Positions 18,777 through 56,944 of a DNA stretch of 64,000 bases are shown here, piece after piece. Origin of the DNA: Ophelia neglecta (lineage: Eukaryota). Every line of letters begins with the position of its first letter. Within the stretch, counting starts at the first letter, position 1. The notes beneath the pieces were generated by a model. That model was not told the origin of the DNA, made no database searches, and was given only the letters and a program-made list of their open reading frames with translations. A program made the position numbers and the translations under genes. The stretch is from the NCBI GenBank assembly GCA_965285935.1, contig OZ260664.1, positions 51,584,001 to 51,648,000 on the forward strand, read 5' to 3'.

Positions 18777-18856
18777 ATGCTGTGCCGATGCTGGTCAGAC
18801 AAGCAGGCGAGAGCCCAAGCTCTGGATGCAGGGGCTCGGTCCTTGCAATCTTCATG
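18777..18856 (+). CDS. Candidate alternative first coding exon MLCRCWSDKQARAQALDAGARSLQSS(+TG), phase 2
   Basis: ATG in acaATG context with an in-frame TAG upstream. 26 codons + 2 nt, ending at consensus donor ATG|GTAAGT. Region is GC/CpG-richer than background. N-terminal Cys pair. Confidence 0.6.
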
Positions 18857-21633
18857 GTAAGTCAGCTAAACAACCTACAAACATTCTCAAAACTATTAAT
18901 TAATGTACATGCCCAAAGCAACAATCAAAACTGATGGAGCTGAAAATTGTTTAGCTGATGAATAGCTCCTATCTCTGCCTAGCAGAGCTAACTAAAAGAA
19001 TTAATCAAAACACAAACAAATCTTCTTATGCTGGGAATTCCAATTTAACCTAAAGAATGATGGTGGCCCATTTGGCAAGTCACTATAAAAGTTATCATGT
19101 GACTATTTGTTGTGGATTATCCTATATAAGTGAATAAACTTGCTACTTTAAAGCAGCAAATGTTGGCATACAGGATTAATGTTACAGAGATTAATTAAGG
19201 CATATAAGACAGGAAAATTTCCTGTGCTAAAATTAAAATCCTATTACCTAGGTCCTGCTCAACATTGCTTTGATGGACAAAATTTGCTGCCTGTAAAATA
19301 TCAGCTGGCTCTCAGGCCATCAAAGTATTGAGGGTGTTTTGTCTGTTATAAATTCACCCTTTCCTATATGCATGCATACTGCTGGAAGCATTGTGAAACA
19401 GCTTTAGATACAGAACTCTAGGTTGTTATGGGTCTTTTGATATTGTAAAAGTGAAAAATTTGTAGAGCCATTCAGTCGCTTAATATCTGCTGTATGTTAT
19501 TTTCCTTGGTACTTAATTTAATTTTTGGTTTTTTTTACAACATTTTATTTCAGTTTCAACTGACAGTGGTTCCAATATATTTCCAAGTAGCAGGGGAATT
19601 GATAAAAGTAGGGAGAGATGTTCACAGTCCAGTGTATATAAGAGCCATGTTATGTGAGAGTTATGTAGTGAAAAGTAACCGTAGATTATTGTGAAGTAGG
19701 TGGTGAAATTCTCTGGCTCCTGACTACTATTGATACCACTAACTTACTATAATAAGTAAGGAAAGATACTGCATAAATCAGTTAAGTGTCAATCTTAATG
19801 TAGTGTGGTTTCTTCATACCACAATGAAATTTACTTTAATTAGTTCAATTCACTATATGATATACTTATACCCACTAACTATGGGGTAAAGTTGATCTCA
19901 CACAGAATGTAGACACCAGCCTTGATACTGTTAACATTTAGTTTGTGCTTCTGATTGTTGAAACAGTCATGCAGAGGCTTGTCTGTTAGAGGTAAAGAAT
20001 TTTTCTTGAATTTTTATTAATTCATGAGATCAAGGGAGCCAGTGTGATTGCAATTCCATGAAATTGTGAAATAAAACAGGACACAATTTACAAATTGTTC
20101 CATTCATGCACATTCGAGAAAAGGAAGTAATATTTCAAGAGAATGCTTTGATCTTCCCTTCATTTGGCAATCTCTGGCCGTTATCTCTTTTGTAAAATGA
20201 TCACCTTCTTTAGTTTCCTATGGGAAGTCTGGGAGAGTTATGGCACACTTTTCAAGTTGGATCAAACCTTTGCCGATTGGTTTTTGATTCCTTGAGGGAT
20301 GACCTTTACCTCTAGGGCGTAGCCGGATGCATTGTTTGACAGATGTGACCAGCATTGCCTAATCCAATCAGATGATAGCTCTGTTTACCAGTCTTCAGCC
20401 ACCATGCATCGATCACACTTTTTGATTGATGTCTTTCTCTTGAGTGCTGTCAGTCCCTTAAAGAAAGGGCCGACTGAACTCAACATGACTTACCCCCGCT
20501 GCCCCTGATGAAAACGAAATCATTTGGGATTAATATTTAGCTAGTAGAGCTTAAATTGAATTTAGGTTTTTTTTTTGGCAAATCACCAGCACCATATTCA
20601 ACTTTCTTTTTCGTAAATTCATATGGATCAATTCTTATTACCATTGGGAGGCATCTCATAAAATATTGATGTATATTGCAGGAAGTTAGGGTACCCATAA
20701 TATTAAATAACTCTTGCTAAACATGTCATTCCTGTGCAATACCAGGAAAAGCATATCCGTGGCTAATAGGAATATTGCATTGCATGATTGCAAATGAGGT
20801 GGTAAACAGTTGATATATACGTTTTGTGTAATTACTCCAAACATAAAAATGCAGCAAATTACTTTTCCTATATTGTAAATGAGGCTATAAAACAGTATTT
20901 ATTTAGGCTTGCACTAGCTGCTTTTCATTAACATGTCAACTTCTTTATTACAGAGAATCAGGTTTCTTCCTCTCAAGCAAATAAAAATGTCAGTGTATAA
21001 AAACTCTGGTCTACATATATCATTAATTTAATTGTTGTAGAACTAAACACATCAGATAACATGAGTATGTCCATTGCACAGCTATACAACAGATATCACT
21101 GTACTGCTTTTTAAGTTGCAAAATGTTTCATTGGGCCAGACATTGCATTAGTAGAGCAACATCTTATTCTCAATTAGAAGTATATACCTAGCCATTCATT
21201 GCCTTTGAATTGCAACACAGTATTGGCAAACCAGGGCCTGATTTCTGAAAAATGAAAATCAGGGTTTCTGTCTTTTAGGTAATATGATTCTTGGCAATCA
21301 GATTAGTGTACTTCTGAAGAAGAAACTTGACACACGTTTCCTAACTGTTTTTCCTCTGCTTTGTTCTCAAGGTTCTTAAGGACAACGATCTTAAATCCTT
21401 TCTTCACCTAGGAGGACAAATCCGTACCATGTAGACTTAACAACCAACATATAGAATGTCAAAGATGTGGCACTTTGGTAGCCTGCGTGCGTGCTCCCTG
21501 GCAATTGGAGAAGGCTCAGGTGTGATAATGTGCACATCATGTAAGTGGCTTAGGTTCTGCCTGGAACATGATACTGATTAATGTTTTCCTGACTAAAGAA
21601 TGGTACAAATGACTTATAAACTGGTAGCTTATA

Positions 21634-21800
21634 CAGTGAAACCTGGGAATAAGACCACCCAATGGACTGGACAATTCTGGCCTGATTATTGAGGTGGTCT
21701 GTTTACACAGGTTATTTTACATTGATAGTGTACATCATGATCTTAATATTAGTAGTCTGAATTGACAGGTGGTCTGAATATAGAGGTGGTCTTTAAGGCA
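21634..21800. mobile_element. MITE copy (same family as 3398-3575), right TIR truncated
   Basis: TA-CAGTGAAACCTGGGAATAAGACCACC...AGAGGTGGTCTTTAAGGCA; colinear with the 3398 copy. Confidence 0.85.
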
Positions 21801-23024
21801 ACAGGGTAGAATTGGGTGTCTCTGTAGAATGTGAATGAGTAATGGTGGTCTATTGGAAATAATACATTTATAGTGGTTGATTAATAATCATGATGATAAA
21901 TAAACAGGTGTTTATCTACAGCCTATTCATCTCCACAGCTAACTTCTACCAACAATGAATTGAACAGTGCAATATACATGCACACATCCATTCAATGTTC
22001 ACTGGCAAGATCGCATATTAAGTGGTCTTCTGCTTCTAAAGGATTGTATCTTCATGAGAATTTTTTAAAGAATTGGGTACTGTAAATTGTAAAATGAACT
22101 CACACAAGAAATTGGTGTGAAATAATGGCTGCAAAATCATCATGTGGCCAGAATTGTAATCTGATAGTCAACTGTTTCTGGTTTACATATTTTGATAGGG
22201 TATATACTCAAGCTGGAGATAGTCCTATTGTCCCAGTTTTCTGGCTGATAGACCACACAAACCATGACCATTGTCTATCACTTGATTGCTTTGATCTATT
22301 GGAATGTAATCCAGTTTTTGGCTTCTGAACTGGATTGAGATATTGGTGGTATCCCCATGGTAGGAGGTCAATAAGTCAATTGACAATACCTTCATAGTGT
22401 AATCCACCTGCCTTCAATACTGTTGACTGCAATGTGAGAAGGTTATCCTGAAGTTCATTATTTTGAAAAAATGAAAAGTGAGTCTTTTATAAGATCAAGT
22501 ATGGTACTGTACAGACAACACTTTTGTATTCAATAGGAACAAGCAATCAACATCTGGGACTTAGTTGGGAGGTTCCCCATGAAAGGACAATATTTTCAAA
22601 GAAATTATGGAATATAATGCATTTCTGTCCCACATTTAGGGCATTGACTAAATGGATATGAATTACAACAATGATTAATCCGAAGTCATACAGGTTAGGA
22701 TTTATTCAAGGAATTTTAAGTGACAAAGAGAAACCTGTTAAAGTCAGCCTAACAACCAGTATATACTATGGTATACTTATTGTGTGAACAATACACAAGT
22801 TAATCTGTCCTGGAATCTAGCTTTCTATTGTGAGGAGTAGAGAGAAGGTCAGTGATGTATTCAATGTGCACGTAGACTGATAGTCAACCACTATTAGTAT
22901 CTTATTGGATTTAAAGCTGTGCTAATGGGAGTAACAAGGATAGAGTAGTCTTCATTCTTGTGGGAGGTAATAGCCAGTTTATGAATGGTGTCTATGGTAA
23001 TAGAATACTCTGACTGATGTGACT

Positions 23025-23122
23025 ATGGGATCTGCCCATGGCCTGTTGAAGACCAACCAAACAGGAGGCAGTGCTGGGGAGGATGAGGATCTTGTAGGCA
23101 GCTACAGGGCATGGAAGGAAGG
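23025..23122 (+). CDS. Candidate alternative first coding exon MGSAHGLLKTNQTGGSAGEDEDLVGSYRAWKE(+GG), phase 2
   Basis: actATGG start, 32 codons + 2 nt, donor AGG|GTAAGG. GC-richer than flanks, protein-like composition, Gly at position 2. Confidence 0.6.
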
Positions 23123-24377
23123 GTAAGGCTTCTACACAATTAGCCATGTGATATATTTTACACATGAGTGACTGCTAGTTTGCTGTTGTTTTGATTATAG
23201 AAATATGTTATATGTATGATAAATATATGTATCAAGATCATGATTTATTATTTTAGGAATTTTGGTGGTTCTGCAGATATGAATCAGTCTATTCTCATGC
23301 ATACATTTATGAATCACATGCATATAGATTTGAATTCTTGAGACTGGCAATGTTTTGTGTTTGTTTCCTGAAAAGATTTATTTCCTAATATTAGTGTAAG
23401 CCAAATGATACAAGCTGTGACTGTAAACAGGTCTTTTATAAGCATTATGTTGCTTGTCTCATTTCCTGTATCCAGCATGAATCGAGCCTGCTGTTAGACT
23501 TGTGGAGCCAACATACTTACAGATTCATCCCATACTATTACCTTAAATGTCACCGGATCAAAAGCTAGGATATTCCACACAAGTAACGACTCAGATACAC
23601 ATCTTGGATGCCAGTGTCCCAATAGAGTACATTGCTTCTCATTCAAGAAAATCCGTCATGGGCGCAAACAAGTTGAATGGGTTCTTCTTCCATGTGCTCG
23701 GTTTAGGACCAATCATAGGCGTTGTGCTGTAAATTGAATTGGTCAAATAAATTTAGTAGATGAGGGCAGACAGAAGATTTGGTATTGAAAGGCTTCCATT
23801 TCATAGCTGAAAGGGAATTGGGCATCCCATTATTGTCTCTTCAAGTCACCTTGTCTCCTGAGAATGTTGATGAACTCCTTGTTCCGTATCAGACAGAAAC
23901 TCTTGTGTGATAATCACATTGGATACAAGTACCTTCTGGAATATCACCTAATCTTATTCTCTGGTCATTGGTATTTTCAAGCTGCCAAGTTTATAGGAAA
24001 AGTCTTATTTGTACAGTAAATGGCCATGTGTATAGGTTACCACCATGGCTCTAAGAGGCCAAAGAGACTTTGTTACTTTGTTACCCAGTATACAATTTTG
24101 TTCCCTCAAAACACTACAGCCTTATATTGGGATCCCTTATGATGCTTTTTCAGTGCACTGATAGTGTGGCATGTTCCAAATTAACAAACCATTTTGTTCT
24201 CTTTTTTTCTTTATTGTTCCCTCCAATATTTTTTCTTTCAAAACAAATTCTTTCCCACAAAATATCCATTATATTCTATCAAATAACTATTTTGTCCAGT
24301 CAAAATACGTTAGGGGAGTCACAATACAATAAGTACACAATGTGTAACATATATAATATTATGCATTACATATGCAT

Positions 24378-24570
24378 GATGGGGTATGAGTTTTCCCCCC
24401 CCTCCTACATACATGTAACAGTTATAGGGTATTGGTTTTCCCCTCGGTTACATACTTTTAACAGTTATGGAGTATGGGTTTTCCCCCTCTCTGACATACA
24501 TGTAACAGTTATGGGGTATGGCTTTTCCCCTCTTCTATGTGCATGTAACAGTTATGATTTTCCCCTTTCA
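24378..24570. repeat. Short degenerate tandem repeat (~43-45 bp, 4-5 copies)
   Basis: Recurrent ATGGGGTATGG..TTTTCCCC....ACATACATGTAACAGTT. Confidence 0.8.
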
Positions 24571-24889
24571 AGCCTTTGTATATATTTTTCTTTAATTGAA
24601 GAGATCCCTTATCACACTAAAATTTCCCAACAAAGAAATGTTCAAAAAAATGTTAATCAATGAAATTTTGATATAAATCATATGACTTGTTAATTCTGAT
24701 CATAGCTTACAATATTTTCTTTCAGCTAAATTACCCACATTTATGCATCAGAATATAGGTCCTGTAACTCTTTATTCAGCAAAATTCTAATTCAGCTAAA
24801 ATATTAATACTGATAATACACAGTTCAATTGTCTTGCCCATTTATTTGTTATAACAAACCAACTTTACACAAGTGAGACCCATTAGTAA

Positions 24890-27490
24890 ACAAGGAAGGC
24901 ACAGGATGATGAGGATATATGACAGAGGGAGAACAGGGATGAATAGGATATGTGACAGAGGCAGAATGAGGATGAACAGGGCATATGACAGAGGCAGAAA
25001 GTGGTAGATGAAAATATGTGACAGAGGTAGAAAGAGGATGAAAAGGATATGTGACAGAGGCAGAATAAGGATGAAAAGGATACCCGGTATGTGGCAGAAG
25101 CAGAATGGGGACGAAGAGTGTATGTGAAAGAGGCAGAAAGTGGATGATGAAAATATGAGGTAGATGCAGAGAGAGGATAAAAGGGATATGTGACAGAGGC
25201 GGAATGATGATGAAGAGAGTATGTGACAGAGGCAGAAAGTGGATGATGAAAATATGAGGTAGATGAAGAAATAGGATGAAAAAAGGATATGTGACAGAGG
25301 CAGAATGACGATGAAGAGAGTATGTGACAGAGGCAGAAAGTGGATAAAGAGCATATGTATAAAGGCAGAGGGTGATAAGTATAAATGACAGAGCGGAAAG
25401 AGGATAAAGAGGATGTGGACAGAGGCAGACAGAGATGAAGAGGCTGTGGGACATGGGCAGACGGAAGAGGATGTAGGACAGAGGCAGACAGAGATGAAGT
25501 GGATGTGGGACAGAGGCAGACAGAGATGAAGAGGATGTGGGACAGAGACAGACAGAGATGAAGTGGATGTGGAACAGAGGCAGACATAGATGAAGAGGAT
25601 GTGGGACAGAGGCAGGCAGAGATGAAGAGGATGTGGTACAGAGGCAGACAGAGATGAAGAGGATGTGGGACAGAGGCAGACAGAGATGTAGAGGATGTGG
25701 GACAGAGGCAGACAGAGATGAAGAGGATGTGGGACAGAGGCAGACAGAGATGAAGAGGATGTGGGACAGAGGCAGACAGAGATGAAGAGGATGTGGTACA
25801 GAGGCAGACAGAGATGAAGAGGATGTGGGACAGAGGCAGACAGAGATGTAGAGGATGTGGGAAAGAGGCAGGCAGAGATGAAGAGGATGTGGGACAGAGA
25901 CAGACAGAGATGAAGTGGATGTGGAACAGAGGCAGACAGAGACGAAGAGGATGTGGGACAGAGGCAGGCAGAGATGAAAAGGATGTGGGACAGAGGCAGA
26001 CAGAGATGAAAAGGATGTGGGACAGAGGCAGACAGAGATGAAGAGGATGTGGGACAGAGCAAGACAGAGATGAAGAGGATGTGGGACAGAGGCAGACAGA
26101 GATGAAGAGGATGTGGGACAGAGGCAGACAGAGATGAAGAGGATGTGGGACAGAGGCAGACAGAGATGTAGAGGATGTGGGACAGAGGCAGACAGAGATG
26201 AAGAGGATGTGGGACAGAGGCAGACAGAGATGAAGAGGATGTGGGACAGAGCAAGACAGAGATGAAGAGGATGTGGGACAGAGGCAGACAGAGATGAAGA
26301 GGATGTGGGACAGAGGCAGACAGAGATGAAGAGGATGTGGGACAGAGGCAGACAGAGATGAAGAGGATGTGGGACAGAGGCAGACAGAGATGTAGAGGAT
26401 GTGGGACAGAGGCAGGCAGAGATGAAGAGGATGTGGGACAGAGGCAGACAGAGATGAAGAGGATGTGGTACAGAGGCATACAGAGATAAACAGGATGTGG
26501 GACAGAGCAAGACAGAGATGAAGAGGATATGAGAGTGAGGTAGACAGAGATGAAGAGGATGTGGGACAGAGGCAGACAGAGATGAAGAGGATGTGGGACA
26601 GAGGCAGACAGAGATGAAGAGGATGTGGGACAGAGGCAGGCAGAGATGTAGAGGATGTGGGACAGAGGCTGACAGAGATGAAGAGGATGTGGGACAGAGG
26701 CAGACAGAGATGAAGAGGATGTGGGACAGAGGCAGACAGAGATGAAGAGGATGTGGGACAGAGGCAGACAGAGATGAAGAGGATGTGGGACAGAGGCAGA
26801 CAGAGATGAAGAGGATGTGGGACAGAGGCAGACAGAGATGAAGAGGATGTGGGACAGAGGCAGGCAGAGATGTAGAGGATGTGGGACAGAGGCAGGCAGA
26901 GATGAAGAGGATGTGGGACAGAGGCAGACAGAGATGAAGAGGATGTGGGACAGAGCAAGACAGAGATGAAGAGGATGTGGGACAGAGGCAGACAGAGATG
27001 AAGAGGATGTGGGACAGAGGCAGACAGAGATGAAGAGGATGTGGGACAGAGGCAGACAGAGATGAAGAGGATGTGGGACAGAGGCAGACAGAGATGAAGA
27101 GGATATGAGAGTGAGGTAGACAGAGATGAAGAGGATGTGGGACAGAGGCAGACAGAGATAAAGAGGATGTGGGACAGAGGCAGATAGAGATGAAGAGGAT
27201 GTGGGACAGAGGCAGACAGAGATGAAGAGGATGTGGGACAGAGGCAGACAGAGATGATGAGGATGTGGGACAGAGGCAGACAGAGATGAAGAGGATGTGG
27301 GACAGAGGCAGGCAGAGATGTAGAGGATGTGGGACAGAAGCAGATAGAGATGAAGAGGATGTGGGACAGAGGCAGACAGAGATGAAGAGGATATGTGAGT
27401 GAGGTAGACAGAGATGAAGAGGATATGTGAGTGAGGCATACTGAGAATTAAAAAGGGTGAGGGACAGAGTCAGAAAGAGTATGAAGAGGA
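24890..27490. repeat. Purine-rich 32-bp satellite (~2.6 kb)
   Basis: Unit GACAGAGGCAGACAGAGATGAAGAGGATGTGG, highly homogeneous over ~25500-27400 with degenerate ~31-bp units on the left. Accounts for the three overlapping minus-strand ORFs with a 32-aa period. Confidence 0.97.
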
Positions 27491-28344
27491 TTTGACCAGA
27501 GGTAGAAAGCCAAGAGAAACACAAAAGTTAATTGGTATTACATGTAAACAAAGGTGGTGATAAACAAATCTGATCAAATATTAATATAAATGTGGATCAG
27601 TTGACCTTTGTATAAACCTGGTGTATAGTTCTGTGTCAATGTAGCACAGTACTCCCATTTGATTGAAAACATTTGTGGCTGTTACTTCAGCAAAATGTTG
27701 CAGCATCCAAGAGCAGGTGATTTGGAGGCAGCAAATCAATGTTTGTGAAATCCCTGCTTTCCTCCTCGTTGGATCTTCCTTTCCATACAAGCTTTGATGG
27801 TCAATATTTGCCTGACAGCTAAATGCCAGTCTTGACCAAACTCTCCGGCTATATTAGGTGACAACCTGTTCCTTGGATGGCATATCAAGTGGCTAGAGGT
27901 GGTCACTGGTGGTAAATTATGATTAATTATTTTGTCAGTTATCAAGCCTAAGCCGGCTGTTACATTCAGACAGCTACTGGAGAGCTTGTCAGCCTAACCT
28001 CAAACTAGATCCATACCTTGGCCTAACAACTTTTCAATATGACAAGATTTATCTTGATTCATTATTTCCATCCAGGCATGAGTAATTATTTTTCTATTTT
28101 ATTATGATGACTTGGCATTTGGCATAGAATTAGAAATATTTGAAATTACAACAGTTAGGAAGTTTAATAACATATTAAAAAAATATCACAAGTATTGCAT
28201 GAAATTTGAAACCGGTATATTGGACATAAAAGTATGCTGTTTATTTCTGGCACACAGATTACATTGTTAAACTATCAGACGGGGCAGTGTGTATTGACAG
28301 CAATGTAATGGCAATGCAAGGTAGAACCAGAGAGTAGAGTGCAT

Positions 28345-28498
28345 CAAGAGGACTTGAAAATGCAGGTCTGATTATGAAGGTGGTCTGTTTTGATAGGTAA
28401 GAATATACTGAAAGTGAAAAGTATGGTTTTCATATCAGTGTACTTGATTGACAGGTGATTTAAACACAGAAATAGTTTGTCAGGCAGGGTTCCATGTA
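28345..28498. mobile_element. Degenerate MITE copy (same family as 3398-3575)
   Basis: GGTCTGATTATGAAGGTGGTCTGTTT...ATTGACAGGTG...GGCAGGGTTCCATGTA matches the internal part and right end of the family. Confidence 0.6.
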
Positions 28499-36330: not shown

Positions 36331-36562
36331 GAAATGATTGAGAAGCATCCTGACTTTATGTGAAAGTTAAACAACTACATGTCTTTTTAAATACACATAG
36401 ATCTGGGCTTAATATTGAACAGACATTTTGCATGATGCTTTGATGATGAACTATCTAAAAGATGTTTTTGAACCAGTTCATCATGGCTTGTAATCTTGAT
36501 ACATGTAAAATTAGCCGAACATGGGTTATTGTCATTGAGAGTGCTATTGTGCATTTATATTG

Positions 36563-36585
36563 ATGGCACTACAAACCCTCTCCAG
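36563..36585 (+). CDS. Weak candidate short first exon MALQTLS(+AG), phase 2 (or recursive-type site)
   Basis: ATG GCA CTA CAA ACC CTC TCC AG|GTGAGC. Strong donor, but only 7 codons. Confidence 0.3.
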
Positions 36586-43370: not shown

Positions 43371-44939
43371 CATAGGTTTCACAATAGTCAAAGCCTTCAA
43401 AAGTCAGCATTACAAACTACCAGTAAATACTTTGGCCAGTGCCTCAACAGTCCTTATTTACCTGTAATGCTGACTTTTTCTGGCATAAACTATTAACAAT
43501 ATATTTATTTAAGTATCTCTTGTGCATGTACATGCATATGTTACCAGTATGTGATTGAAAAAACTTAACATCCCTAAACATACCCCATGCTATAAGTAGC
43601 CCCCCCCCCCACCCACCCCTTTGACAAGCCTACCTGCTGAACATGCCCAACTCTACCGGCTATATATGCCCACTCTATCCACTGAACTTTTTTTTTTTAA
43701 TGGAAAATAGATTGTTTAAAAAACAATCAATCAAGCTCCTCCAAATAAATCTACTTGCCTACATTTGTTGAAAAGGAACAAGATATTTGGGAAATATAAC
43801 CCCAGTCATCACCAACCACCACCTGCAACTGTGCATGTATATTACAAACTTATGTGCATAGTAATTATGGGAGAAAAGTATCTTACTGGTAAGAAATAGT
43901 TGATACTTTGACCAACTCTGCACTGAGATGTTTATACACATACCTGTTATAATGTACATTACTTTTTAACTGGCATAGTACCACAGAGCATTTTACTAAA
44001 CTAATAATAAAATTAGGAATGCATATATAGTTTATATTTTGAAGTGATGTACATGTATATATATTTGTTTATGTGCATAAGGGTAAGTTATCTTTTATGA
44101 ATAGGACCTATATTGTATGAGTTACCAGAAAGAATATTAGAGAAATATACCGGTAGATAGTATTGAATATACATATATATAATAATAAACTTGTCATGTA
44201 ACATTTCAAAGGGGGTGATGATGAATTAGTCCACTTTAGGACAATTGGTGTATTGTGAAGCAGATGTTAACTATTGTGTAGTCAGAACGCCTATCCTTAG
44301 AGTGATAACTAACTACCACTAACTAAAAGATGATGTATGTAGACTTCATCAATGGGAAGGAAGCTGGTTGTCGTTTTCTTTTTTTATCATCACAATCACC
44401 TGATAGTTGAGCAGAGGCGTTTTTTGTGTGGGAGTTGGTTGCTGCCATTTACTCAGAAACATGCTACTAGGAGTTGTTAAATTATACACATCACATGTAT
44501 TAAAACCATGTGGTTTAGTGTGTTTTCTTGTCATTTGTCACTCCAATCATATCTGTGCTCAGTGATTGTCTCTACCAGCTGCTCTGTCCAGTGTAAATGA
44601 CTCCATTTCTCCAGCTTGATGAACATACACGTACACACTGTGTACATCATTTGATGCTTTTTATATGGATTTTTTCTTTCTTGGAAAGGCCAAAATGCAT
44701 GTGAATTATGTTACATCAAATAGTCGGCAATCAGTAATTTATTGACTCCTTTTAGCCTTTCACTGGAGTAAATGGATCTGCAACTGATTGACTTGTCACA
44801 TCTATTTCCTCTCAGGTACACTCTATACCTACACATCTGGACCAGGCTGGGTTCTCATTGAATAGTTTAGTATCTAATTTATACCATTTTTTCATTAATT
44901 CATGAAAGTAAATGTTCCACTTATAGATCAAATAATTCA

Positions 44940-45098
44940 AATGTATATTCTCTTCTTTCAGGTAAGTGTTCAAACTTGGATATTCAGATAGAATTTTTTC
45001 ATCTAAGCCAATGTGCTCCTAAAGATCCAGGTAAAGAAGGAATTTAGAAAATAAGGATTACTTGTCAACAAATTCTATGCTCGTGTGAAAAGGTAAGT
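44940..45098 (+). other. Candidate recursive splice site (3'ss|5'ss at 44961/44962) with 131-nt RS-exon
   Basis: Pyrimidine tract TATTCTCTTCTTTCAG is immediately followed by GTAAGT. A second consensus donor AAG|GTAAGT lies at 45092/45093. Confidence 0.5.
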
Positions 45099-48000: not shown

Positions 48001-49214
48001 GGCTTGTAGCACTATGGTGCTGGGGTCACAAGTCAAGGAGCTGCTGGTAATCTAGATGACTTGATAAATGGTGTGTGTCTACCTGGCAATGAACACTGAC
48101 AATACACAAGGCTGGAACGTGATGGCTTAGTCGGAGGTCATGACCAGTCAGGCATACACCAGTGATAATGTTAATAGTAATGACAGCAATTGGAATTTGG
48201 ATACAATAAATACCGGTAGTGCAGAACTACCAAGAATTTTATCCATTGATCTTTGGAACCAACTTTATGTGAAGCACAGCATTGGTCATGGGAGTGAACA
48301 TTTTTTAGAAACAAAAATCAATTATAAATGTCTAGGAATTAACTCGCCAGAGGCAAGTCACATCATCAAATGTGTTGACTTCACTAATGTAATGGCAGAC
48401 ATGGTGATCGCCTGCATGCAGCAAAGCAGATGATTCCTTGTCTTCTTTATTCAGCACTGGCTATTATCTTATGGCTGAAAGGAGTGTTCCTGACTACTTG
48501 TATAATCTCCGTATGAGTCTGAAGTGGTTTAATCAGTGGGTAATTACCATTTCACTGGGCTCATTGTCACCATGGAGCTCTCTTTTTGGGCAGCTCAATG
48601 ATTAAACATGAACACTTACCACCAAATTTAGAGCAGCTAGTCTTTTCTGACCTCGGGTAGAACCATAAATCAAAGTATGTGATAAGCAAAGATAGCTATC
48701 ACTTGATTATTTTATTAAGGTACATCATAAATAATTGGAAATATTTAATTTAGTGACCTCACCCATTATCCAGCTCTCAGCTAATGGCAGGAACCAGTGA
48801 AAATGAATACATTTACAAGCTGATACTAAAATCTGCATGAACTGCCAGAGACTATCGGAAAAGGACAGAAATTTATGGATTTCTCTGATTCCACATCTAA
48901 TTGGGAGATTGTGAAGACATTCTTGGCCTTTCAGACAGTTCAGTAACCTTAGGGGGGATTCTAAAGCTCTGACCCCTGTGTGCCGTTGGGCAGATGTACA
49001 ATGGCCATCTCATAGGACAGTCTTCCAGGAATTATGGACTAAAACAAGGAAAAGAAAGTCAACCCAATTCTGAGACACCAGATCAGTTTAACTCCCACTG
49101 AAATGTGTCAACTTTCTATAGTCAGGAACCATCGTAAGTAACTTTGATAATGCCTGTGTTGATCATGTGGTGAAATTCAATATAGATTTCTTTGCATTTG
49201 ATCAGACACACAAA

Positions 49215-49384
49215 ATGTGGCAGAGCGCAAATGACAGAGTAAACAGTACATTTTTGCCTAAAAAATATCTTCAAGGCTGCAATCTGAACGAGGATCATTT
49301 GGCCTGGGGACGCAATATATTGAGATACCTGGAGTGGCATGGCTGTGAGGAGGCGGCTAACAAACAAGTCAGACGGTACCTCAG
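49215..49384 (+). CDS. Candidate alternative first coding exon MWQSANDRVNSTFLPKKYLQGCNLNEDHLAWGRNILRYLEWHGCEEAANKQVRRYL(+AG), phase 2
   Basis: caaaATG start, 56 codons + 2 nt, strong donor CAG|GTGAGC; the unspliced frame stops immediately. Protein-like composition, CpGs retained. Confidence 0.7.
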
Positions 49385-50166
49385 GTGAGCCGACCTTCAT
49401 GTTATATTGAGACTTGTTAAGGTGATGTACATGTCCATGTATCTGTGCTGGCCTGGAGCTAGCTCAGGGCCGAGGAGAAAGTCAATGGTTTTACTGGGGT
49501 TGATTGTGTTACTCTGGCTACACCAGGCTCAAAGGGCCAAAAAACAAGTGACATTAACCTCGTTTAGGGGATGTTGCTATAAATACTGGTTTGCCTAGGT
49601 CAGTAGGTGAAAATCTACATGTACATTCAAGCAGCGATGAATAATAAAGCTAGGAGAATAAGATTTTAGTAAGATATTTTGGCGCACTGTACCAATCTGA
49701 GCTGTTGTTAATAAATAAGATAAAATGATTAACTCCTAACCATATGACACCTAATACATAACTTTTTGTCTCACATAACAATTAGTTTATTTTTGTGATT
49801 GAGGAAGTTAAGAAAAATGTCACTTAGACTGACTAGCAGAGGAATCCTAACATGTGTTCTAGAGATATCAGAGGGAGTGAAGCTAATGAAAAGAATACCT
49901 ACCAGTGTTTCCATCACTAGAAAGTCCTGTCCCTTGATAATTGAGTCCCATCTTACAGCTACTTACAGCTACTTACAGGTCCTATTTTGACTATTTGGTC
50001 TTGAAGCCTCTAGCATCATATTGTGGTACTGTTCGAGATTTGACTGTACATGTCACATTTGAACTACAAGTTTCTATGGCTATTTGTACAGGTACATAGA
50101 TATTACATGGCCTAGATCATATAGGCCCCCATATAGGCATGAGTTTATTTAACCCATCCCTTTACA

Positions 50167-50792
50167 CAGGGATAATTCTGCTATGCGGCATTGCCGCATT
50201 GCCCCATTAATTCTTAAAATCCCCCATTCCACCGCCCATGGGCGCGGGAAAAGTGAGCATCGTTTTCGAGGGTAAGACTACGTGGAATGGCTAGGCAAAG
50301 AAGCACTCCGGGCTTCCAGTGTGTCCCGTAGTTGTGAAATTTGTCGAAACCAATACCCGTTCATAACCCAAGAATATCCGCCACAGTTTACATGTACACG
50401 ATGTGCAAGAAAGTGGATCTGGGTTTTCCGAGGCCCGGTTTTGCCCGCGATCTCTAATGGGACACTTCTTCCTTAGTACTACTGCTGCCACTGCTGATCT
50501 CACTTCGCATATCACATTTTCTTTGCGGGCAAAGTATGCCACCAAAAATGCGTCTTAGGCCAGACAAAGGCCCGAAGGTGCTGTCTACACTTGGAATTTT
50601 TAAACAGAATAATGTTTGTGTGATCTTTCAACATTTTATTTATTTGAACAACTTTTTATTAACAAACGGCATATTATAGACCATTATAATATGACTGAAA
50701 ATGTATCCCCCATTCCTCAAAAAATGGCCCATTGACTAGGTCAGAGATGGGGGCAAATCCCCCATTCTGGCCACAACCCTGAATTATCCCTG
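50167..50792. mobile_element. Non-autonomous hAT-like DNA transposon (626 bp)
   Basis: Perfect 12-bp TIRs CAGGGATAATTC / GAATTATCCCTG. Imperfect target duplication CTTTACA / CTTTAGA(T). Subterminal CCCCATT motifs at both ends, CpG-rich interior, no transposase ORF. Confidence 0.85.
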
Positions 50793-52140
50793 CTTTAGAT
50801 ATTTGCCTGAGCCTAAGGTGAGGCAAGCAATTGATTCAGTTAGGCCTATACAAGGGACTATAGTTTAACATCCACCCCAAACCACATACATCAGTCATAC
50901 ATGAACATGTATGCTGCCAAATTGGCAAACATTTCTAAAAATGGGCACTGTTATTTAACCAAATCTTGTCCACATGTAAATCAGCACATGTCTGGGGAAA
51001 CTTCATACAGGGGACTCGCAGGAGATGATAGTTTTGTAGTCCAATTTCAGGTAGTGCCTGGCTTATTTGTAAACTTCAACAGAATGGGTGCATATTGCTG
51101 GAAATATGAGACCAGTCAAAAATATGCATAAATCGGGTATATTTGTTACCATCTCATCTTACTTTTTGTCTGATATATTTTGTATTTTTTCCCGTTAATT
51201 AGGTCTGTACTTTTCAGAAAACTGATGCTAACCATAATGGCTTGTTGTGACCATTTAATACCTGATTTAGGTTAGATGGCAAAAACAATAAAATTATTCT
51301 TTGCCCATTGTTTTGTAGGTCTAACCATCTGACTGTCTGCTAGACTGGCTCAATATGCACTCTTACTTATTTCGACATGGCCCTGGCCATTTCTATCCAG
51401 CTATACTACTTAGTGGTATTATGTGTTGCTACTTTTCTACCAGGTGGGGATTGGTATCCTTGGGACTGGAGTGTGTGTTGGTGTAGGGGGAGGGAATGGG
51501 GTGTAGGGTATTAGATACTTATTTCTTTCATTTTCCTTGTTAACCATTAAAGCAGGGAACTCTTTCTCAAAGAAATATATTGGAGCAAATATGGTAGAGA
51601 AAAAAGAATTGGCAAGGTTACCAGTGCACACCTTAAAGAGAGATTCCGTACCACTTTAATCTACCTACTTGTATCTAATTTGTATTTTGGTCCCACCAGC
51701 AGATTTTGCTCTTGGATTAATCAATAGATGGAATGCATGACACAAATTCTAATTGGGAAAAATATGTACTTTGATGGTCATACACTTGCAATCTTCTCTG
51801 TGGATACAATAATCTTGCTTTCTTTAGGGATAATTGTTTGATATAATTCTTTGTAGTTTTATATAAACATTGTTTAGTTTATATCCTTTGAAAATCTGTT
51901 ACTTAAAGGCTAAGTTGTAGGGTAAGTAAATGACTCAAGCCAAAAGTGATTTTACATCCAAATGCATGGAGATAGTAATATGCTTTTGTATTCAGTTTAA
52001 AGCAAAGTCATATGTCAAGCTTGGAGGTTCCTTTTTTTTTAGGATACTTAAGTTAATGCATGGGTGGGCTATTGGGGGTCAGATAACCAGTCTCTGATGT
52101 GACAAATTAAATTTGCAATTAGAAAAACCGGTTTTGGAGT

Positions 52141-52291
52141 GCCCTTAGTCAGAGAGCTACAAATACTATATTATTCTTAGCCCTAACCAGAGACCAACAC
52201 ATTCTATATTCTTAGCATGTATCAGATAACCACAAATCCTATATTATTCTGAGCCTTAATCAGAGACCTCCAAATCCTATATTATTCTTAG
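52141..52291. repeat. Short ~38-bp tandem repeat (about 4 copies)
   Basis: Recurrent AAATCCTATATTATTCTTAGC...ATCAGAGACC. Confidence 0.8.
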
Positions 52292-52478
52292 TTTATTTAT
52301 CTAATTACCTTTCTATCTTTTTATACATTGTCACATTTTTCATTTTTATGTCAGATGGTGTGATATAAATATTTCACCTCAAACTAAGACATAGGGTAGA
52401 AAAACCAAATACCAAATAGTCAGAAATAAAATTCTGAAATACATCCATTCTGTGCAAAATTGATATTATCTTTCAAAG

Positions 52479-52503
52479 ATGAGTTCTTGCAATTTAAGCA
52501 GAG
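52479..52503 (+). CDS. Candidate 25-nt micro-exon
   Basis: ATCTTTCAAAG|ATGAGTTCTTGCAATTTAAGCAGAG|GTGAGTAT. Strong donor, modest acceptor. Reads (D)EFLQFKQ+AG if entered in phase 1 and exited in phase 2, or MSSCNLSR+G (phase 1). Confidence 0.3.
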
Positions 52504-54889
52504 GTGAGTATGTGTTTAATATGAGCTCATATATCTATTTGCTCATCAATATATGCGGCCTTGAGTTCCACTTGAGGCCTGCTATTTATGGTATTTTATG
52601 TACTGATCTCAAAGTGTGTTTGTTTTTGCATGTGTGTCGGGCACACCTGTTTTATATTACCTAATCTATAAGTCAACTTAAAGGTAATGTTAACGGCCAT
52701 TTAAATCAGTGTTTGATGGAATTTTATTGCCTTTTTTGGCTTTTGTGATCATGTTCAAGTAACATGTACATGTATGCTGATTACAGTGAAATGTAAATGC
52801 AAGTGGTTAAATCAGGCCTATAAACTCAATATGCTTCCATAAAAACTTCCCTGGAGTACAAAAAATCCATTATGGTTAATACACCTTGACTTTGTATAAT
52901 TTCTGTCAAAGTTCTTATTTTTTGGAGTGGGTGAAGTGGATTTGATTTGGCCGGGGGCCAGATATCAATTCTATTGTGTCTACAAAAGACTCAGCTTGGA
53001 GTGTTATAGGGATATACATTTGATAATTCTGTTATATGTACCTTGAACATACTGACATACACTGTGTGAAAAGTTCACAAACATACAAAGTCAAGCTTTG
53101 AAGGTGTTGTATGGAAGAGGCTCAGGGGTGACAGTTATCGCTTATTGTTTGTAGTTTTTCCTTACTACCATTTAATTCATAGTGCAGCATACTTGTAGGC
53201 TCATGTACCCTTGATCTGAGTATCCGGCCGAGAAACAAACCATATCAAACTGTACCAGTGAGTAAAGTTAGCTGGGAGCTAGGAGAGCTGTCACTCGCCA
53301 GAGCAGTTGACCTTTAATTTGCAGTGTCATGAACAGGATTTGCGCTCTTCCTGCCCAGCATGGATGGGAGTTTTGTCCGGCAGTGATTGATGGAAGCGTT
53401 CGTTGTTTAGATATCACACTCTATGTTAAACCAATGTAAATTCAGAAGAGTGGCATAGGAGCCTTGTTTTGATGAATTGACTTGCTTGTACACATTTTGG
53501 TAAAAAGCGGTTAATAGTGATTTATTAAAACCTTCTATGGCAAACATGAGAGGTGGAATGACTGGAACTTAAAAACAATTCATTACAAGGTTTTTGACAA
53601 TAAAAGCTGTAGTATGGGGTACTTAAATATGATCAGCTCACTTTGGAAATTAAATGTCTCTTCTTTTAATGTGGAAAGTACACATGTGGATTAAATGTGT
53701 GCTAATGAATTTGATGCTATATGTAGTGATTAACATTGTTATGAATTGTCTTGTATTTATGCACAGCCTACATGATCCTCTTTTTAAGATGTCATTGTCA
53801 TCAGACTGATCATGTTATGCCTTGAGTGCATGAGACATTGAGTTGTAATCTTTGAATATTGGAGGATACATCTTTGACACCATGATAAACAGAATAATAA
53901 GCCAGTAATAAGCCCGTAGGGAGTGATAGTAGCTCAGTAAGTAATCAGATTACCAGACTGGAACATGCTATCAGGAAGCCATTTTACATGTTTTACATGC
54001 AGAAATTACATGTACATTTAATTTTCTGTTTCTGAGACACACAAATGTGAATCAGTGATGTAAACTTCTAGACATTATAAGCTGGATATAAAAAAGAAAA
54101 ACATATTGTATGCCTCAGATCAGATCAATATCCAGTTAGATACAACCTTCAGTGCATGAGTATTAGATGAAATCCCTCTGCATAACTCTTATCTGAAGGG
54201 TACCAAAGTTCAAGTGGACATATACATGTACAGTATACCGCAGGATTAAACCATTTCATTTTTGTGTGTTTATGGTACATTTTAGTCACCCACTTCTAGT
54301 TTTTTTATTTGTTCTTAAAGAAATACTTCTTTGTCAGTTTCAATTACATAAAGGTGTATACATGTATGCACATACTCTGATTGGGTACTTCTTTATTGTA
54401 TCTATTTAAGCCAACTTAAGTTTTCTGTTATGAAATAGCCTGTGGTTATAAATAGAAGTTATAACATTAAACCCATTTTACATACATTTTACTTCTTTGA
54501 CAGTTGAACAGAGAAGGAGCAAGTAGGGGTGGGATAAAGTGGGTTTATAAATGAACTGTTAATTTTATTCATGTTACTGAAGGCTGTAAATGATCTTCTT
54601 TTAAGTGGATACCTTTCAACTTGACTACAATTTATGAGTTCACTACTTTGATTTAGTATAATAATTAATTCAGATATTCATTTCTGTACTTTTATTGGTG
54701 CAGATTGCCAGCATAGAAATTGTTTGTCAATTTCATTTTTAATTCATCAATGAAGCCCATGACATTAACATGTAAATAGCTTTGTTACCTGACAGCTGAA
54801 GAGATACGTTTACATCAGCGGCCACTTTGCACTGTTTTTGATTTGTCAAAGAATGGCAAGTCATGATACAGACTACTTGGACCTATGGA

Positions 54890-55075
54890 GTATTGATACT
54901 GGGAATCAACATACATTCTGTGAAATAGGACCTTTAAACATAGATACTGGCAGTCAACAGACATCTGTGAGATATGACACATTAATATGGACACTGAATG
55001 TCACATGTATTCTGTGAGATATGACACCTTTGTATGGATACTGGAAGTGGCTGCCTTCTGTCAGATATGACCGTC
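54890..55075. repeat. Degenerate ~42-bp tandem repeat (4-5 copies)
   Basis: Recurrent GATACTGG..GTCAAC...TTCTGTGAGATATGACAC. Confidence 0.75.
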
Positions 55076-56410
55076 ACTGTATGTGGGATTGAGGACAATC
55101 TTGTTTCTGATCACAAAGCTATAGGCTGACTACACCCCAATAAGTATTGATGATTTCACATGGAAGTGGAACTATGATGGTTTGGTTGGATTAATCAAAA
55201 GTTAGAGATATTGTTGCAAACTGCATCTGGCACAACATTTAGCCAGCAATCTCTTAATACAAATGGAAAACATGAAAAAAAGTGCAGATTGAATTAATTT
55301 TAAAGATGATCATGACAGAACACTATATTTCCCTGAGCTCATGATTGACTGGAATTTATTGCCTTGTGAAATGGCTGAGAAATTTGTTGCCTGGTGTCAG
55401 ATAATGAGCTGGTTAGGGGGTAAGGGTTACCATAGTTTGTCAGCCAGTGGTAGGTCCTATTGTATACATAAGCTTTATAATACACCATTCATCATCTGGC
55501 TGTATTTTTGCACTTGGGTCAAACTGATAAACTAATTTTTGATGATGTCTCTATTTATCACTTTAATGGAGTGCGATGGATTCGAGGGAACAGTAAACTG
55601 CAGTGTATAATTTAGTATTAGGTGTCTCTCATTATTAGGACTATTCTGGGTGGGAGTAAATTTATGTTGCCTACCATTGGATGTGCTGGGTGTTTAAATA
55701 TAAAATGTGCAGGGGATTTTATTTTTGCTAAGATATTTGCAGAATACAATTATGACTGAAATATATCCCATGATTGTTCAGTTTCATCTGAAAGATGAAT
55801 TCTCAGCAAGCATACTGACTTCAAGTTGAATTTGAAGTATAATAACCCAGCCGCCTTCTGCATGGATATACAAGGATATTGTGCACTGATGATATAGTTT
55901 CAATAGTCCAAATTATCGCGGCCCTGATAAAGATATTATTACCTGTATGTATAGATGGAGTATGTAGGCGTAAGAGTTGGCCTTTCATATAGTAACCTTT
56001 CACTTTAAAGAGGATACAATGTTATGATGCCAATGGACAGCACACCTGATCCTGGAAGGAGCTATTTCTGTCTGCCATCCCAGAGACTATTGGTTATATG
56101 GGCTAATAGCCAGTCTTATCTAACCACATATCACTGGAACAAGTAGTGAAGTGGCAGCCATATATACACTATATTACTATGATATGATAACCGTCTGGTA
56201 ATTGACTGCTGCTGTTTAAAAAAGGACTCACAGATTTGGTCCAAGCCTTCAGAAACAATTTGGTAGAATAGACTAGTGCGTTGTCCTCAGAAAGCCTAGT
56301 GTCAGTATGAGACAGACATTGATCATTTTAGAGATTGTTCCTGTGTAAGAAGTCACACTTAGACATACATATACATGTATTTGTGAAGATAAGTTGCCCC
56401 CTGTGCTGAT

Positions 56411-56586
56411 ATGGGAGCAGGGGCTAGCTCAACAGCTAAGAGAGGTGCCACCTCTGGTGGCAGTTCAGGTGCTTCCTCTGGTGGCAGGTCTGATGGCAGA
56501 TCAGGCCCTAGAGGATTTGTGGTGACCACCGCTGCACCAGGAGCCAGGATTATCACTGATCACAAGAAACAGGACAAACAAAAAAG
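56411..56586 (+). CDS. Candidate alternative first coding exon MGAGASSTAKRGATSGGSSGASSGGRSDGRSGPRGFVVTTAAPGARIITDHKKQDKQK(+AG), phase 2
   Basis: 58 codons + 2 nt in a GC-rich island, donor AAG|GTTAGT, after which the sequence returns to AT-rich. MGxxxS N-myristoylation consensus followed by KR. Confidence 0.75.
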
Positions 56587-56936
56587 GTTAGTTTGCCAAT
56601 TTGCATCAATTTGGTTAAACAATATACTGTGGGGGAAAGTTTATGTCAAACTCCAAGTGCCAAAATTTCCACTACTTTACAGTAAATACATGTACATTGT
56701 TTTGTATGAAAATGAGCTTGTGACCACTACCATTGCTAACAAATGTAGTTCTAATTAGGACTTGGTTGACTTGAATTACTATCGAGGCTGATTAAAGCTG
56801 GTTAAGTCCCAGTTAATTTTCAAAATTATTGATTTCTCTACATTTTCTTTTGCTTACAACCATTGGTACATCCATTTGAAGGTTTATTTGAATGGCTGAC
56901 TTTGTGTAGACTTTGCCCACTTGTCAATGTTTACCA

Positions 56937-56944
56937 ATGGGGAG
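56937..56944 (+). CDS. Weak candidate minimal first exon MG(+AG), phase 2
   Basis: ccaATG GGG AG|GTAAGT with a perfect donor. A competing out-of-phase ATG lies 10 nt upstream. Confidence 0.25.

What the first reader, a model, noticed from the sequence alone, without database searches (positions are those of the whole stretch)
18777..56944. Array of phase-2 alternative first exons that could give one protein many different N-terminal targeting tags
Seen: five isolated, protein-like, ATG-initiated mini-ORFs on the + strand (18777, 23025, 38847, 49215, 56411), 4-16 kb apart. Each ends exactly two nucleotides into a codon at a GT donor (TG|GTAAGT, GG|GTAAGG, AG|GTAAGG, AG|GTGAGC, AG|GTTAGT). They are too short or truncated to stand out in the ORF track and share no sequence similarity. 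Established: a common exit phase is the signature of mutually exclusive first exons joined to one shared exon; Gly2 (MGxxxS) directs N-myristoylation, and N-terminal Cys or polybasic runs direct palmitoylation and membrane binding. Inference: a promoter-choice system supplying one downstream protein core with different localisation signals (MLCRC, MGSAHG, MFRRKPKICRAC, MGAGASS, and the unacylated MWQS). Because one exon ends in TG, the shared exon cannot start with A (TGA). A cyclic-nucleotide phosphodiesterase such as PDE4/dunce is one hypothesis, since vertebrate PDE4D long-form N-termini join as C/S/G before FDVDNG, but nothing in this window identifies the gene. Caveat: I looked for phase 2 after seeing the first cases, so there is selection bias.
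Basis: partly seen in the sequence, partly recalled or inferred. Interest (0 to 1): 0.85.

Follow-up and report, generated by a model that had tools for sequence, protein, structure and literature searches.

The report
Giant intron of FRMPD4-like scaffold gene

Summary
The five ATG mini-ORFs exist exactly as written, each 3n+2 before a GT, and all are single copy. They are not more than chance: outside tandem repeats the + strand holds 6/16/13 such ORF+donor pairs in phases 0/1/2, against about 9±3 per phase in shuffles.

The gene is not a phosphodiesterase. It is a FRMPD4/Preso-like WW-PDZ-FERM scaffold gene at G000:C7:51581800-51741458 (+).

The window lies wholly inside the 104-kb intron between two exons:
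- the canonical WW1 exon (…GRIYYV+AG|GTAAG), 2.1 kb before the window;
- the shared WW2 exon (ag|C CAC… = HHTQTTQWIPP), 38 kb after it.

A conserved third exon, MGNKNTKGCQCLSP…K+AG|GTAGG (L003:3189-3274), lies 23 kb past the window. It resembles the MGN… N-termini of mollusc and arthropod orthologues and also exits in phase 2.

They show no similarity to 43 orthologue N-termini, the two tested (c4, c5) found no protein homologue, and no RNA data were available. Most are probably chance ORFs in GC-rich islets. Verdict: partly supported, moderate interest.

The parts
1..64000 (+). Interior of the 104,071-nt intron of a FRMPD4/Preso-like gene. The intron runs from the WW1-exon donor at C7:51581886 (2.1 kb before window base 1) to the acceptor of the shared WW2 exon, which starts at C7:51685957 (38.0 kb after window base 64000). 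The conserved MGN first exon (L003:3189-3274 = C7:51671189-51671274) lies 23.2 kb after the window end, inside the same intron.
   Evidence: Window = C7:51584001-51648000. A profile of 27 orthologue WW1 N-termini has its best genome hit at C7:51581800-51581883 (E 1.7e-4). Pattern hits: GGC AGG ATT TAC TAT GTT AG|GTAAG at C7:51581866-90 and AG|C CAC CAC ACT CAG ACA ACC CAG TGG ATT CCA CC at C7:51685955-89. P0017 maps exon by exon to C7:51685955-51741458 (+).
18777..18856 (+). Candidate c1: ATG ORF MLCRCWSDKQARAQALDAGARSLQSS + TG, donor ATG|GTAAGT. With the real acceptor (C) it would read ...SSC-HHTQ. Unverified.
   Evidence: Sequence. Single copy. GC 0.59 against 0.38 in flanks. Best match to 43 orthologue alternative N-termini is E 0.046, not significant.
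23025..23122 (+). Candidate c2: MGSAHGLLKTNQTGGSAGEDEDLVGSYRAWKE + GG, donor AGG|GTAAGG. It would read ...KEG-HHTQ. Gly2 is present, but position 6 is Gly, a weaker myristoylation context. Unverified.
   Evidence: Sequence. Single copy. GC 0.56 against 0.35. No orthologue similarity.
38846..38923 (+). Candidate c3: MFRRKPKICRACSKEDLADYNENKG + AG, donor AAG|GTAAGG. An acceptor ctcaatcactttcAG| lies directly before base 38846. So this is equally a 78-nt phase-2-in / phase-2-out cassette candidate. Unverified.
   Evidence: Sequence. Single copy. GC 0.39, the same as the flanks. No orthologue similarity.
49215..49384 (+). Candidate c4: 56-codon ORF MWQSANDRVNSTF...KQVRRYL + AG, donor CAG|GTGAGC. 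Unverified.
   Evidence: Sequence. Single copy. No Pfam match. No homologue among 5.8 billion proteins in the allowed length range. No orthologue similarity.
56411..56586 (+). Candidate c5: 58-codon ORF MGAGASSTAKRGATSGG...HKKQDKQK + AG, with the unusual donor AAG|GTTAGT. It has Gly2 and Ser6 (a good N-myristoylation context) but is Gly/Ser-rich and low in complexity. Unverified.
   Evidence: Sequence. Single copy. No Pfam match. No homologue. One heterozygous synonymous SNP at 56491, with SNP density as in the flanks. DNA contigs only, no spliced form.

Best explanation
The window is intronic DNA of a FRMPD4/Preso-like scaffold gene (WW-WW-PDZ-FERM) transcribed on the + strand.

The gene has at least two mutually exclusive first coding exons.
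- Canonical exon: encodes the first half of WW domain 1 (...GRIYYV) and lies 2.1 kb upstream of the window.
- MGN exon: a conserved short exon, MGNKNTKGCQCLSPIRKKRPIHCQTSLK, 23 kb downstream of the window. It has a Met-Gly-x-x-x-Thr-Lys myristoylation context followed by CxC.

Both end with AG two bases into a codon. Both should join the same exon, which begins C|CAC CAC ACT... (Ser-His-His-Thr-Gln-Thr-Thr-Gln-Trp-Ile-Pro-Pro).

That shared exon carries the second Trp-Pro half of WW1. Inferred from this: promoter choice gives either a complete tandem-WW protein or a protein with WW1 destroyed and replaced by a probable lipid anchor.

Shown here: exon positions, phases, orthology, and the conservation of the junction and of the MGN exon.
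Inferred: use of two promoters in this species, acylation, and its effect on localisation.

The five mini-ORFs inside the window would be in frame with the real acceptor. They are most likely chance ORFs in GC-rich islets of a very long intron, picked out because they end in phase 2.
For: Gene identity:
- The 282-aa ORF L006:1083-1928 finds a 1660-aa Tubulanus protein, P0017, with WW, PDZ, RA-like and FERM_M domains.
- P0017 maps in collinear order to 13 + strand exons at C7:51685955-51741458.
- G000's own exon L005:6920-7141 scores FERM_M at 33.9 bits (cut-off 23.8).
- 120 full-length orthologues are named FERM and PDZ domain-containing protein 4/3 or uncharacterized.

Architecture:
- WW1 exon and its phase-2 donor.
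- MGN exon with an in-frame TGA upstream, strong start context and phase-2 donor.
- Acceptor ag|C CAC at exactly the start of the P0017 match, one of only 9 pattern hits in the genome.

Conservation:
- The MGN exon resembles the N-termini of Argonauta, Argopecten and Stegodyphus proteins (E about 5e-5; M-G-N invariant in 12 sequences).
- Species with RefSeq isoforms have WW1 plus MGN forms.
- In 106 distinct orthologue junctions the residue before the constant His is never K/E/Q/M/W, as a phase-2 intron with a pyrimidine-first exon predicts.

Chance origin of the five:
- Phase counts 6/16/13 against shuffles of about 9±3.
- No similarity to 43 alternative N-termini.
- No Pfam match for any of the five, and no homologue for c4 or c5, the only two searched.
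Against: - No RNA evidence of any kind was available for this species. Neither use nor non-use of any exon, including the two conserved ones, is shown here.
- c1, c2 and c5 are sharply GC-richer than their flanks. All five have a purine at -3 of the ATG. Their donors are good except c5's GTTAGT. This is what young, lineage-specific first exons would look like.
- The nearest annotated orthologues are only about 60% identical in the FERM exons. Lack of similarity for fast-evolving N-terminal exons is therefore weak evidence.
- Some crustacean, oyster and nemertean orthologues carry a third, unrelated N-terminus.
Confidence: 0.62

Rival explanations
1. One to three of the window ORFs (most plausibly c5 MGAGASS..., then c2 or c1) are real, lineage-specific extra first exons of the FRMPD4-like gene. 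Each would have its own promoter, adding further N-termini to the WW1 and MGN forms.
For: - All five are in frame with the acceptor now identified (C first base, phase 2).
- c1, c2 and c5 are GC-rich islets whose limits match the ORFs.
- All have a purine at -3. All are single copy and not transposon-derived.
- c5 has Gly2 and Ser6.
- Other lineages have third, unrelated N-termini: Ostrea MRLL...KKKSKSSSESH, Lineus MDFDLNDDYIDLSVGESH, Penaeus.
Against: - No phase-2 enrichment.
- 27 other GC islets carry no such feature.
- No similarity to any orthologue N-terminus, and no homologues for c4 or c5.
- c5's donor GTTAGT is a rare type and its peptide is low in complexity.
- SNP density in c5 equals that of the flanks.
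Confidence: 0.27
2. One reading: all five are promoter-driven mutually exclusive first exons, an array giving one protein core five (with the flanking exons, seven) different localisation tags.
For: All five share the exit phase that the real acceptor needs. The locus demonstrably uses this mechanism for two other exons.
Against: - Phase-2 candidates are as common as chance predicts, and phase 1 is commoner.
- Orthologues with isoform annotation show 2, rarely 3, N-termini.
- No support for any single exon, and c4 and c5 found no homologue.
- The proposed gene (PDE4) is wrong.
Confidence: 0.03
3. c3 (38846-38923) is an internal exon rather than a first exon. It would be a 78-nt phase-2/phase-2 cassette or decoy exon, used during stepwise removal of the 104-kb intron or included in a minor isoform. 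The AG|GTAAGT site at 44961 would be a recursive splice site of the same intron.
For: - A good acceptor lies directly before base 38846, and the length is divisible by three with matching phases.
- The AG|GTAAGT at 44960, with 15/20 pyrimidines upstream, is the only such site on either strand of the window. It lies 47 kb into the intron.
- Established knowledge: very long introns in animals are often removed in steps.
Against: - If included after the WW1 exon it would insert 26 residues into WW domain 1.
- GC content is no higher than the flanks.
- No conservation or RNA evidence. AG...GT pairs of this size are common by chance.
Confidence: 0.08

Closest known systems
FRMPD4 / Preso1 (vertebrate FERM and PDZ domain-containing protein 4) and its relatives FRMPD1/FRMPD3
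   Same: Same WW-PDZ-FERM order (PMC4192811 introduction; Pfam on the orthologue P0017). Exons map collinearly. G000's own FERM_M exon scores above the cut-off. Many orthologues are named FERM and PDZ domain-containing protein 4 or 3 by their sources.
   Different: The invertebrate gene encodes a second, N-terminal WW domain split across the first intron. It also has an alternative MGN... first exon. A search of the held literature for FRMPD together with myristoyl found 8 papers, none with either term in its title or abstract; judged from titles and abstract openings alone (none was opened), none appears to describe an acylated FRMPD isoform. From memory, not tested: human FRMPD4 begins with a short non-WW exon ending ...SSH before RTKSSGWPPP, which would be the same junction.
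Alternative-promoter N-terminal switches of synaptic scaffolds, e.g. PSD-95/SAP97 alpha (palmitoylated Cys) versus beta (L27 domain) isoforms; also KChIP N-terminal variants
   Same: Works alike: mutually exclusive first coding exons joined to one common exon exchange a protein-interaction module for a lipid anchor. This comparison rests on general knowledge and was not tested here.
   Different: Unrelated proteins. Here the exchanged module is the first half of a WW domain, whose second half lies in the shared exon. The switch therefore also makes or breaks a domain.
PDE4 / dunce long-form N-terminal exon array
   Same: The concept is the same: many upstream first exons spread over a large region and one shared acceptor.
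   Different: No PDEase_I exon lies downstream on the + strand. The nearest on C7 are 1.8 Mb away on the - strand and 2.5 Mb upstream. The shared exon encodes HHTQTTQWIPP, not FDVDNG.

Membership tests
FRMPD4/Preso-like FERM-and-PDZ scaffold | WW domain near the N-terminus | tested here: met
   P0017 residues 40-81 (Pfam WW at 61-90) map to C7:51685955-51686083. The exon start reads HHTQTTQWIPP. WW1 half-domain exon ...GRIYYV. The exons were read only through matches, not in full.
FRMPD4/Preso-like FERM-and-PDZ scaffold | PDZ domain after the WW domain | tested here: met
   P0017 residues 79-169 (Pfam PDZ at 113-178) map to C7:51698562-51698729 and 51699183-51699293 at 66-68% identity.
FRMPD4/Preso-like FERM-and-PDZ scaffold | FERM domain after the PDZ domain, on the same strand and in order | tested here: met
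   L005:6920-7141 scores FERM_M at 33.9 bits (cut-off 23.8). Six collinear exon matches at C7:51710343-51715141.
FRMPD4/Preso-like FERM-and-PDZ scaffold | Binding to PSD-95, Homer/mGluR or LGN, as shown for vertebrate members | not testable with these tools
   Functional property; needs experiments.
Mutually exclusive alternative first coding exons with a shared acceptor | Two or more ATG-bearing exons upstream of one acceptor, all with the exit phase that the acceptor needs | tested here: met
   WW1 exon ...GTT AG|GTAAG. MGN exon ...AAA AG|GTAGGC. Acceptor ag|C CAC. All are phase 2.
Mutually exclusive alternative first coding exons with a shared acceptor | Transcripts that join each first exon directly to the shared exon | not testable with these tools
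   Only three DNA-like runs were found for this organism. Laid contigs are unspliced genomic DNA. In other species, source annotations list both N-termini joined at the same His. That supports the two conserved exons only.
Mutually exclusive alternative first coding exons with a shared acceptor | The five window ORFs belong to the set | tested here: inconclusive
   They are in frame with the acceptor. But phase 2 is not enriched, and they have no orthologue similarity and no Pfam match; c4 and c5 found no homologue.
N-myristoylated / palmitoylated N-termini | Met-Gly start with a small residue (Ser/Thr favoured) at position 6; nearby Cys for palmitoylation (established consensus) | tested here: met
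   MGN exon: G2, T6, K7, C9, C11. M-G-N is invariant in 12 orthologous N-termini. c5: G2, S6. c2: G2, G6. This is a motif match only; the modification itself was not tested.
PDE4 / dunce | PDEase_I catalytic domain exons downstream on the same strand | tested here: not met
   PF00233 search of the whole genome. The nearest hits on C7 are at 53.44 Mb (- strand) and 49.07 Mb. None lies between 51.58 and 53.4 Mb.

The most novel reading that the evidence does not exclude
The 104-kb first coding intron of this FRMPD4-like gene is a promoter-choice array. Besides the conserved WW1 and MGN exons, several of the five window ORFs would be lineage-specific first exons, giving the scaffold up to seven N-termini: a second myristoylated one (MGAGASS), Cys-rich and polybasic ones, and unacylated ones.
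Probability: 0.05. Interest if true: 0.6.

Novelty: new member of a known kind. Interest (0 to 1): 0.35.

Why it matters
FRMPD4/Preso is a postsynaptic scaffold linked to intellectual disability and epilepsy (PMC13060437, PMC5414091).

The data here show that its invertebrate orthologues keep an old two-promoter switch, shared by molluscs, cephalopods, spiders and crustaceans. The switch gives either a form with a complete tandem WW domain or a form in which the first WW domain is cut and replaced by a Met-Gly-Asn / Cys-rich N-terminus of the lipid-anchor type.

This switch can be seen in database isoform models, but I found no description of it in the held literature. It gives a simple testable idea of how the scaffold could be directed to membranes.

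For the scan, the case is a calibration. 'Same exit phase' across hand-picked mini-ORFs in a long intron carries no weight without a phase null, even when the locus truly uses the proposed mechanism.

Tried and rejected
1. PDE4/dunce: rejected by the whole-genome PF00233 search.
2. Pfam on the five peptides and on ten downstream ORFs: nothing useful.
3. RNA evidence. The look-up of sequencing runs on a 9-kb stretch returned only three DNA-like runs.
4. Genome letters. I did not fetch more letters by other tools. All later whole-genome searches were run with loci 0. The WW1 and shared exons are therefore known only from match tables and two short pattern matches.
5. A first pattern of 36 places exceeded the size limit and was shortened by one place.
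6. A weak tblastn match of a WW1 N-terminus at window 56034-56078 (WTAHLILEGAISVCH) was rejected: no YY motif, no donor, E 0.016 among about 120 queries.
7. Repeat origin of the five ORFs: rejected, all are single copy. The broad query was swamped by a SINE-like element.
8. The search for homologous proteins with c4 and c5: no homologue. This is weak, because only proteins of 0.55-1.75 times the query length are seen.
The only joined step was in the local comparison, where each candidate peptide carried the single junction residue and the His implied by the acceptor.


Full report
**1. The observation**

ATGs at 18777, 23025, 38847, 49215 and 56411 open frames of 80, 98, 77, 170 and 176 nt. 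Each frame ends two bases into a codon before a GT, and the peptides are as quoted. The window has 38.5% G+C, no N and no soft-masking. All five stretches are single copy in the genome, so they are not transposon fragments.

**2. Is it more than chance?**

With ATG-ORFs of 75-400 nt ending at GT[AG]AG, the + strand gives 4/12/19 in phases 0/1/2. About ten of the phase-2 cases are copies inside the tandem array at 34.2-36.3 kb.

| Set | Phase 0 | Phase 1 | Phase 2 |
|---|---|---|---|
| + strand | 6 | 16 | 13 |
| - strand | 5 | 6 | 4 |
| 100 dinucleotide shuffles (sd about 3) | 9.5 | 8.6 | 9.0 |

Phase 2 is not enriched, and the five are 5 of 13. Four of them coincide with GC-rich islets (exon GC 0.46-0.59 against 0.35-0.39 in flanks). 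There are 31 such islets in the window. GC-rich DNA in an AT-rich intron holds open frames by itself. The common exit phase therefore has no evidential weight here.

**3. What the locus is**

The window is G000:C7:51584001-51648000 of a 762-Mb animal genome.

- Sample L006, 80-90 kb downstream, holds long + strand open frames.
- The 282-aa frame L006:1083-1928 was searched against 1.84 billion representatives. It found 18 proteins, among them a 1660-aa protein of Tubulanus polymorphus, P0017.
- P0017 has WW, PDZ, RA-like and FERM_M domains.
- P0017 maps exon by exon, in order and on the + strand, to C7:51685955-51741458.
- G000's own exon L005:6920-7141 scores FERM_M above the curated cut-off.
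- A search with the WW-PDZ-FERM part of P0017 gave 1672 relatives. The best 120 are full-length proteins of molluscs, nemerteans, brachiopods, annelids, arthropods and echinoderms. Many are named FERM and PDZ domain-containing protein 4 or 3.
- Vertebrate FRMPD4 (Preso1) is a WW-PDZ-FERM postsynaptic scaffold (PMC4192811).
- The PDE4 idea fails: no PDEase_I exon lies downstream on the + strand within 1.8 Mb.

**4. The N-terminal architecture of the family**

The N-termini of the orthologues fall into classes. All classes join the common sequence at one point, x-His-x-Thr-Gln-Thr-Ser-Ser-Trp-Leu-Pro-Pro.

- The commonest class encodes the first half of a WW domain (L..GWEAKL...GRIYY.NH).
- A second class starts Met-Gly-Asn and is rich in Cys and basic residues. 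It is seen in Littorina, Babylonia, Mactra, Mercenaria, Ruditapes, Argopecten, Argonauta, Stegodyphus, Daphnia, krill and Tigriopus.
- A few species have a third, unrelated class (Ostrea, Lineus, Penaeus).
- Where a source lists several isoforms, a species shows two distinct N-termini as a rule.

In 106 distinct junction contexts the residue before the constant His is N, S, D, G, T, R, I, H, C or A. It is never K, E, Q, M or W, which together make 19% of the neighbouring residues. That is the signature of a phase-2 intron whose downstream exon begins with a pyrimidine. The contexts are not phylogenetically independent, so the small P value is only indicative.

**5. The same architecture in this genome**

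(a) WW1 exon. A profile of 27 WW1-type N-termini (A1) has its best hit in the whole genome at C7:51581800-51581883 (+) (E 1.7e-4). A degenerate pattern for G-R-[LIV]-[YF]-Y, five free bases and GTRAG hits six places in the genome. One is C7:51581866-51581890, reading GGC AGG ATT TAC TAT GTT AG|GTAAG. The canonical exon thus ends in phase 2 with AG, 2.1 kb before the window.

(b) MGN exon. tblastn of the orthologue N-termini against the held DNA found L003:3189-3272, MGNKNTKGCQCLSPIRKKRPIHCQTSLK.
- The ATG follows an in-frame TGA with no other ATG between, and has A at -3 and G at +4.
- The exon ends AAA AG|GTAGGC, phase 2.
- It resembles the MGN N-termini of Argonauta, Argopecten and Stegodyphus (E about 5e-5 in a small database).
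- It lies at C7:51671189-51671274, 23.2 kb after the window.

(c) Shared exon. A pattern for AG, a pyrimidine, His, six codons and Trp-x-Pro-Pro hits nine places in the genome. One is C7:51685955-51685989: AG|C CAC CAC ACT CAG ACA ACC CAG TGG ATT CCA CC. This is exactly where the P0017 match begins. The shared exon therefore begins with C in phase 2. AG+C gives Ser, TG+C gives Cys and GG+C gives Gly.

The window lies wholly inside this 104,071-nt intron. Its positive G-over-C skew on the + strand is in keeping with transcription in that direction.

**6. How it most likely works**

Shown: two first coding exons with the same exit phase, one acceptor, and conservation of both exon types and of the junction.

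Inferred: each exon has its own promoter.
- The WW1 exon plus the shared exon give a complete first WW domain, because the second Trp and the Pro are in the shared exon.
- The MGN exon gives a protein without a functional WW1. It has Gly2, Thr6 and Lys7 (the N-myristoyltransferase context) and Cys9 and Cys11 (palmitoylation candidates).

The switch would exchange a ligand-binding module for a membrane anchor.

**7. The five window ORFs**

All five would be in frame with the real acceptor, but so would any of the 13 phase-2 candidates.
- None resembles any of 43 distinct alternative N-termini of orthologues (best E 0.046).
- None has a Pfam match.
- c4 and c5 find nothing among 5.8 billion proteins within the length limits.
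- No RNA run was found. The three runs that hold the region are unspliced genomic contigs. They show one heterozygous, synonymous SNP in c5, with SNP density as in the flanks.

In favour of some being real: the sharp GC contrast of c1, c2 and c5, a purine at -3 in all five, good donors (except c5's GTTAGT), and the fact that other lineages have evolved third N-termini.

c3 has an acceptor directly before it. At 78 nt with phase 2 on both sides, it is as good an internal-exon candidate as a first exon.

My estimates:

| Outcome | Probability |
|---|---|
| None is used at a meaningful level | about 0.6 |
| One to three are real | about 0.3 |
| All five | about 0.03 |

**8. Limits**

- The closest annotated orthologues are only about 60% identical in conserved exons, so absence of similarity for N-terminal exons is weak.
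- The WW1 and shared exons were not read in full.
In one search the candidate peptides carried only the junction residue and the His.

**9. Verdict**

It is wrong about the gene and unsupported for the listed exons.

The underlying biology is a conserved switch between a tandem-WW form and a lipid-anchor form of a FRMPD4-like scaffold. It is a new member of a known kind of system and is of moderate interest.

Noticed in passing
window 44947-44967 (+): tattctcttctttcAG|GTAAGT is the only AG|GTRAG with at least 15/20 pyrimidines upstream on either strand of the window. It lies 47 kb into the 104-kb intron now identified, which is the right context for the recursive splice site proposed in note s1-733688.
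   Followed up: partly
window 21629-21800: A SINE-like element of about 170 bp, with more than 3000 first-look candidates across the genome at 80-94% identity. Some copies are in short tandem runs, e.g. C1:95408581-95409477.
   Followed up: partly
window 4239-5176, 14318-15069, 24903-27491, 34230-36261: Four tandem arrays with units of 41 bp, 29 bp, 32/64 bp (about 66 copies, strongly G-rich on the + strand) and 51/76/127 bp. The last array produces many spurious phase-2 ATG-ORF+donor pairs.
   Followed up: partly
L007-L010 (C7:51748001-51818000 as sampled): A 483-bp satellite begins a few kb after the 3' end of the FRMPD4-like gene and fills every sampled 10-kb chunk for at least 70 kb. Its orientation flips near L010:5000.
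   Followed up: no
L012-L013 (C7:51544001-51574000 as sampled): A tandem repeat of about 1.9 kb, each copy with a 135-aa open frame (SLDCCVGFHTFQLYRADTSEFGHQ...), lies just upstream of the WW1 exon. Its nature is unknown.
   Followed up: no
L014:4338-6442 (-), L016:1374-2660 (-): A BTB-like coding region on the - strand upstream of the gene, and a reverse-transcriptase-like ORF of a retroelement further upstream.
   Followed up: no
orthologue proteins P0017-P0222: Across 106 distinct junctions in molluscs, nemerteans, arthropods and echinoderms, the residue before the constant His is always one with a pyrimidine-ending codon. The phase-2 intron that splits WW domain 1 therefore appears to be ancient.
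   Followed up: yes
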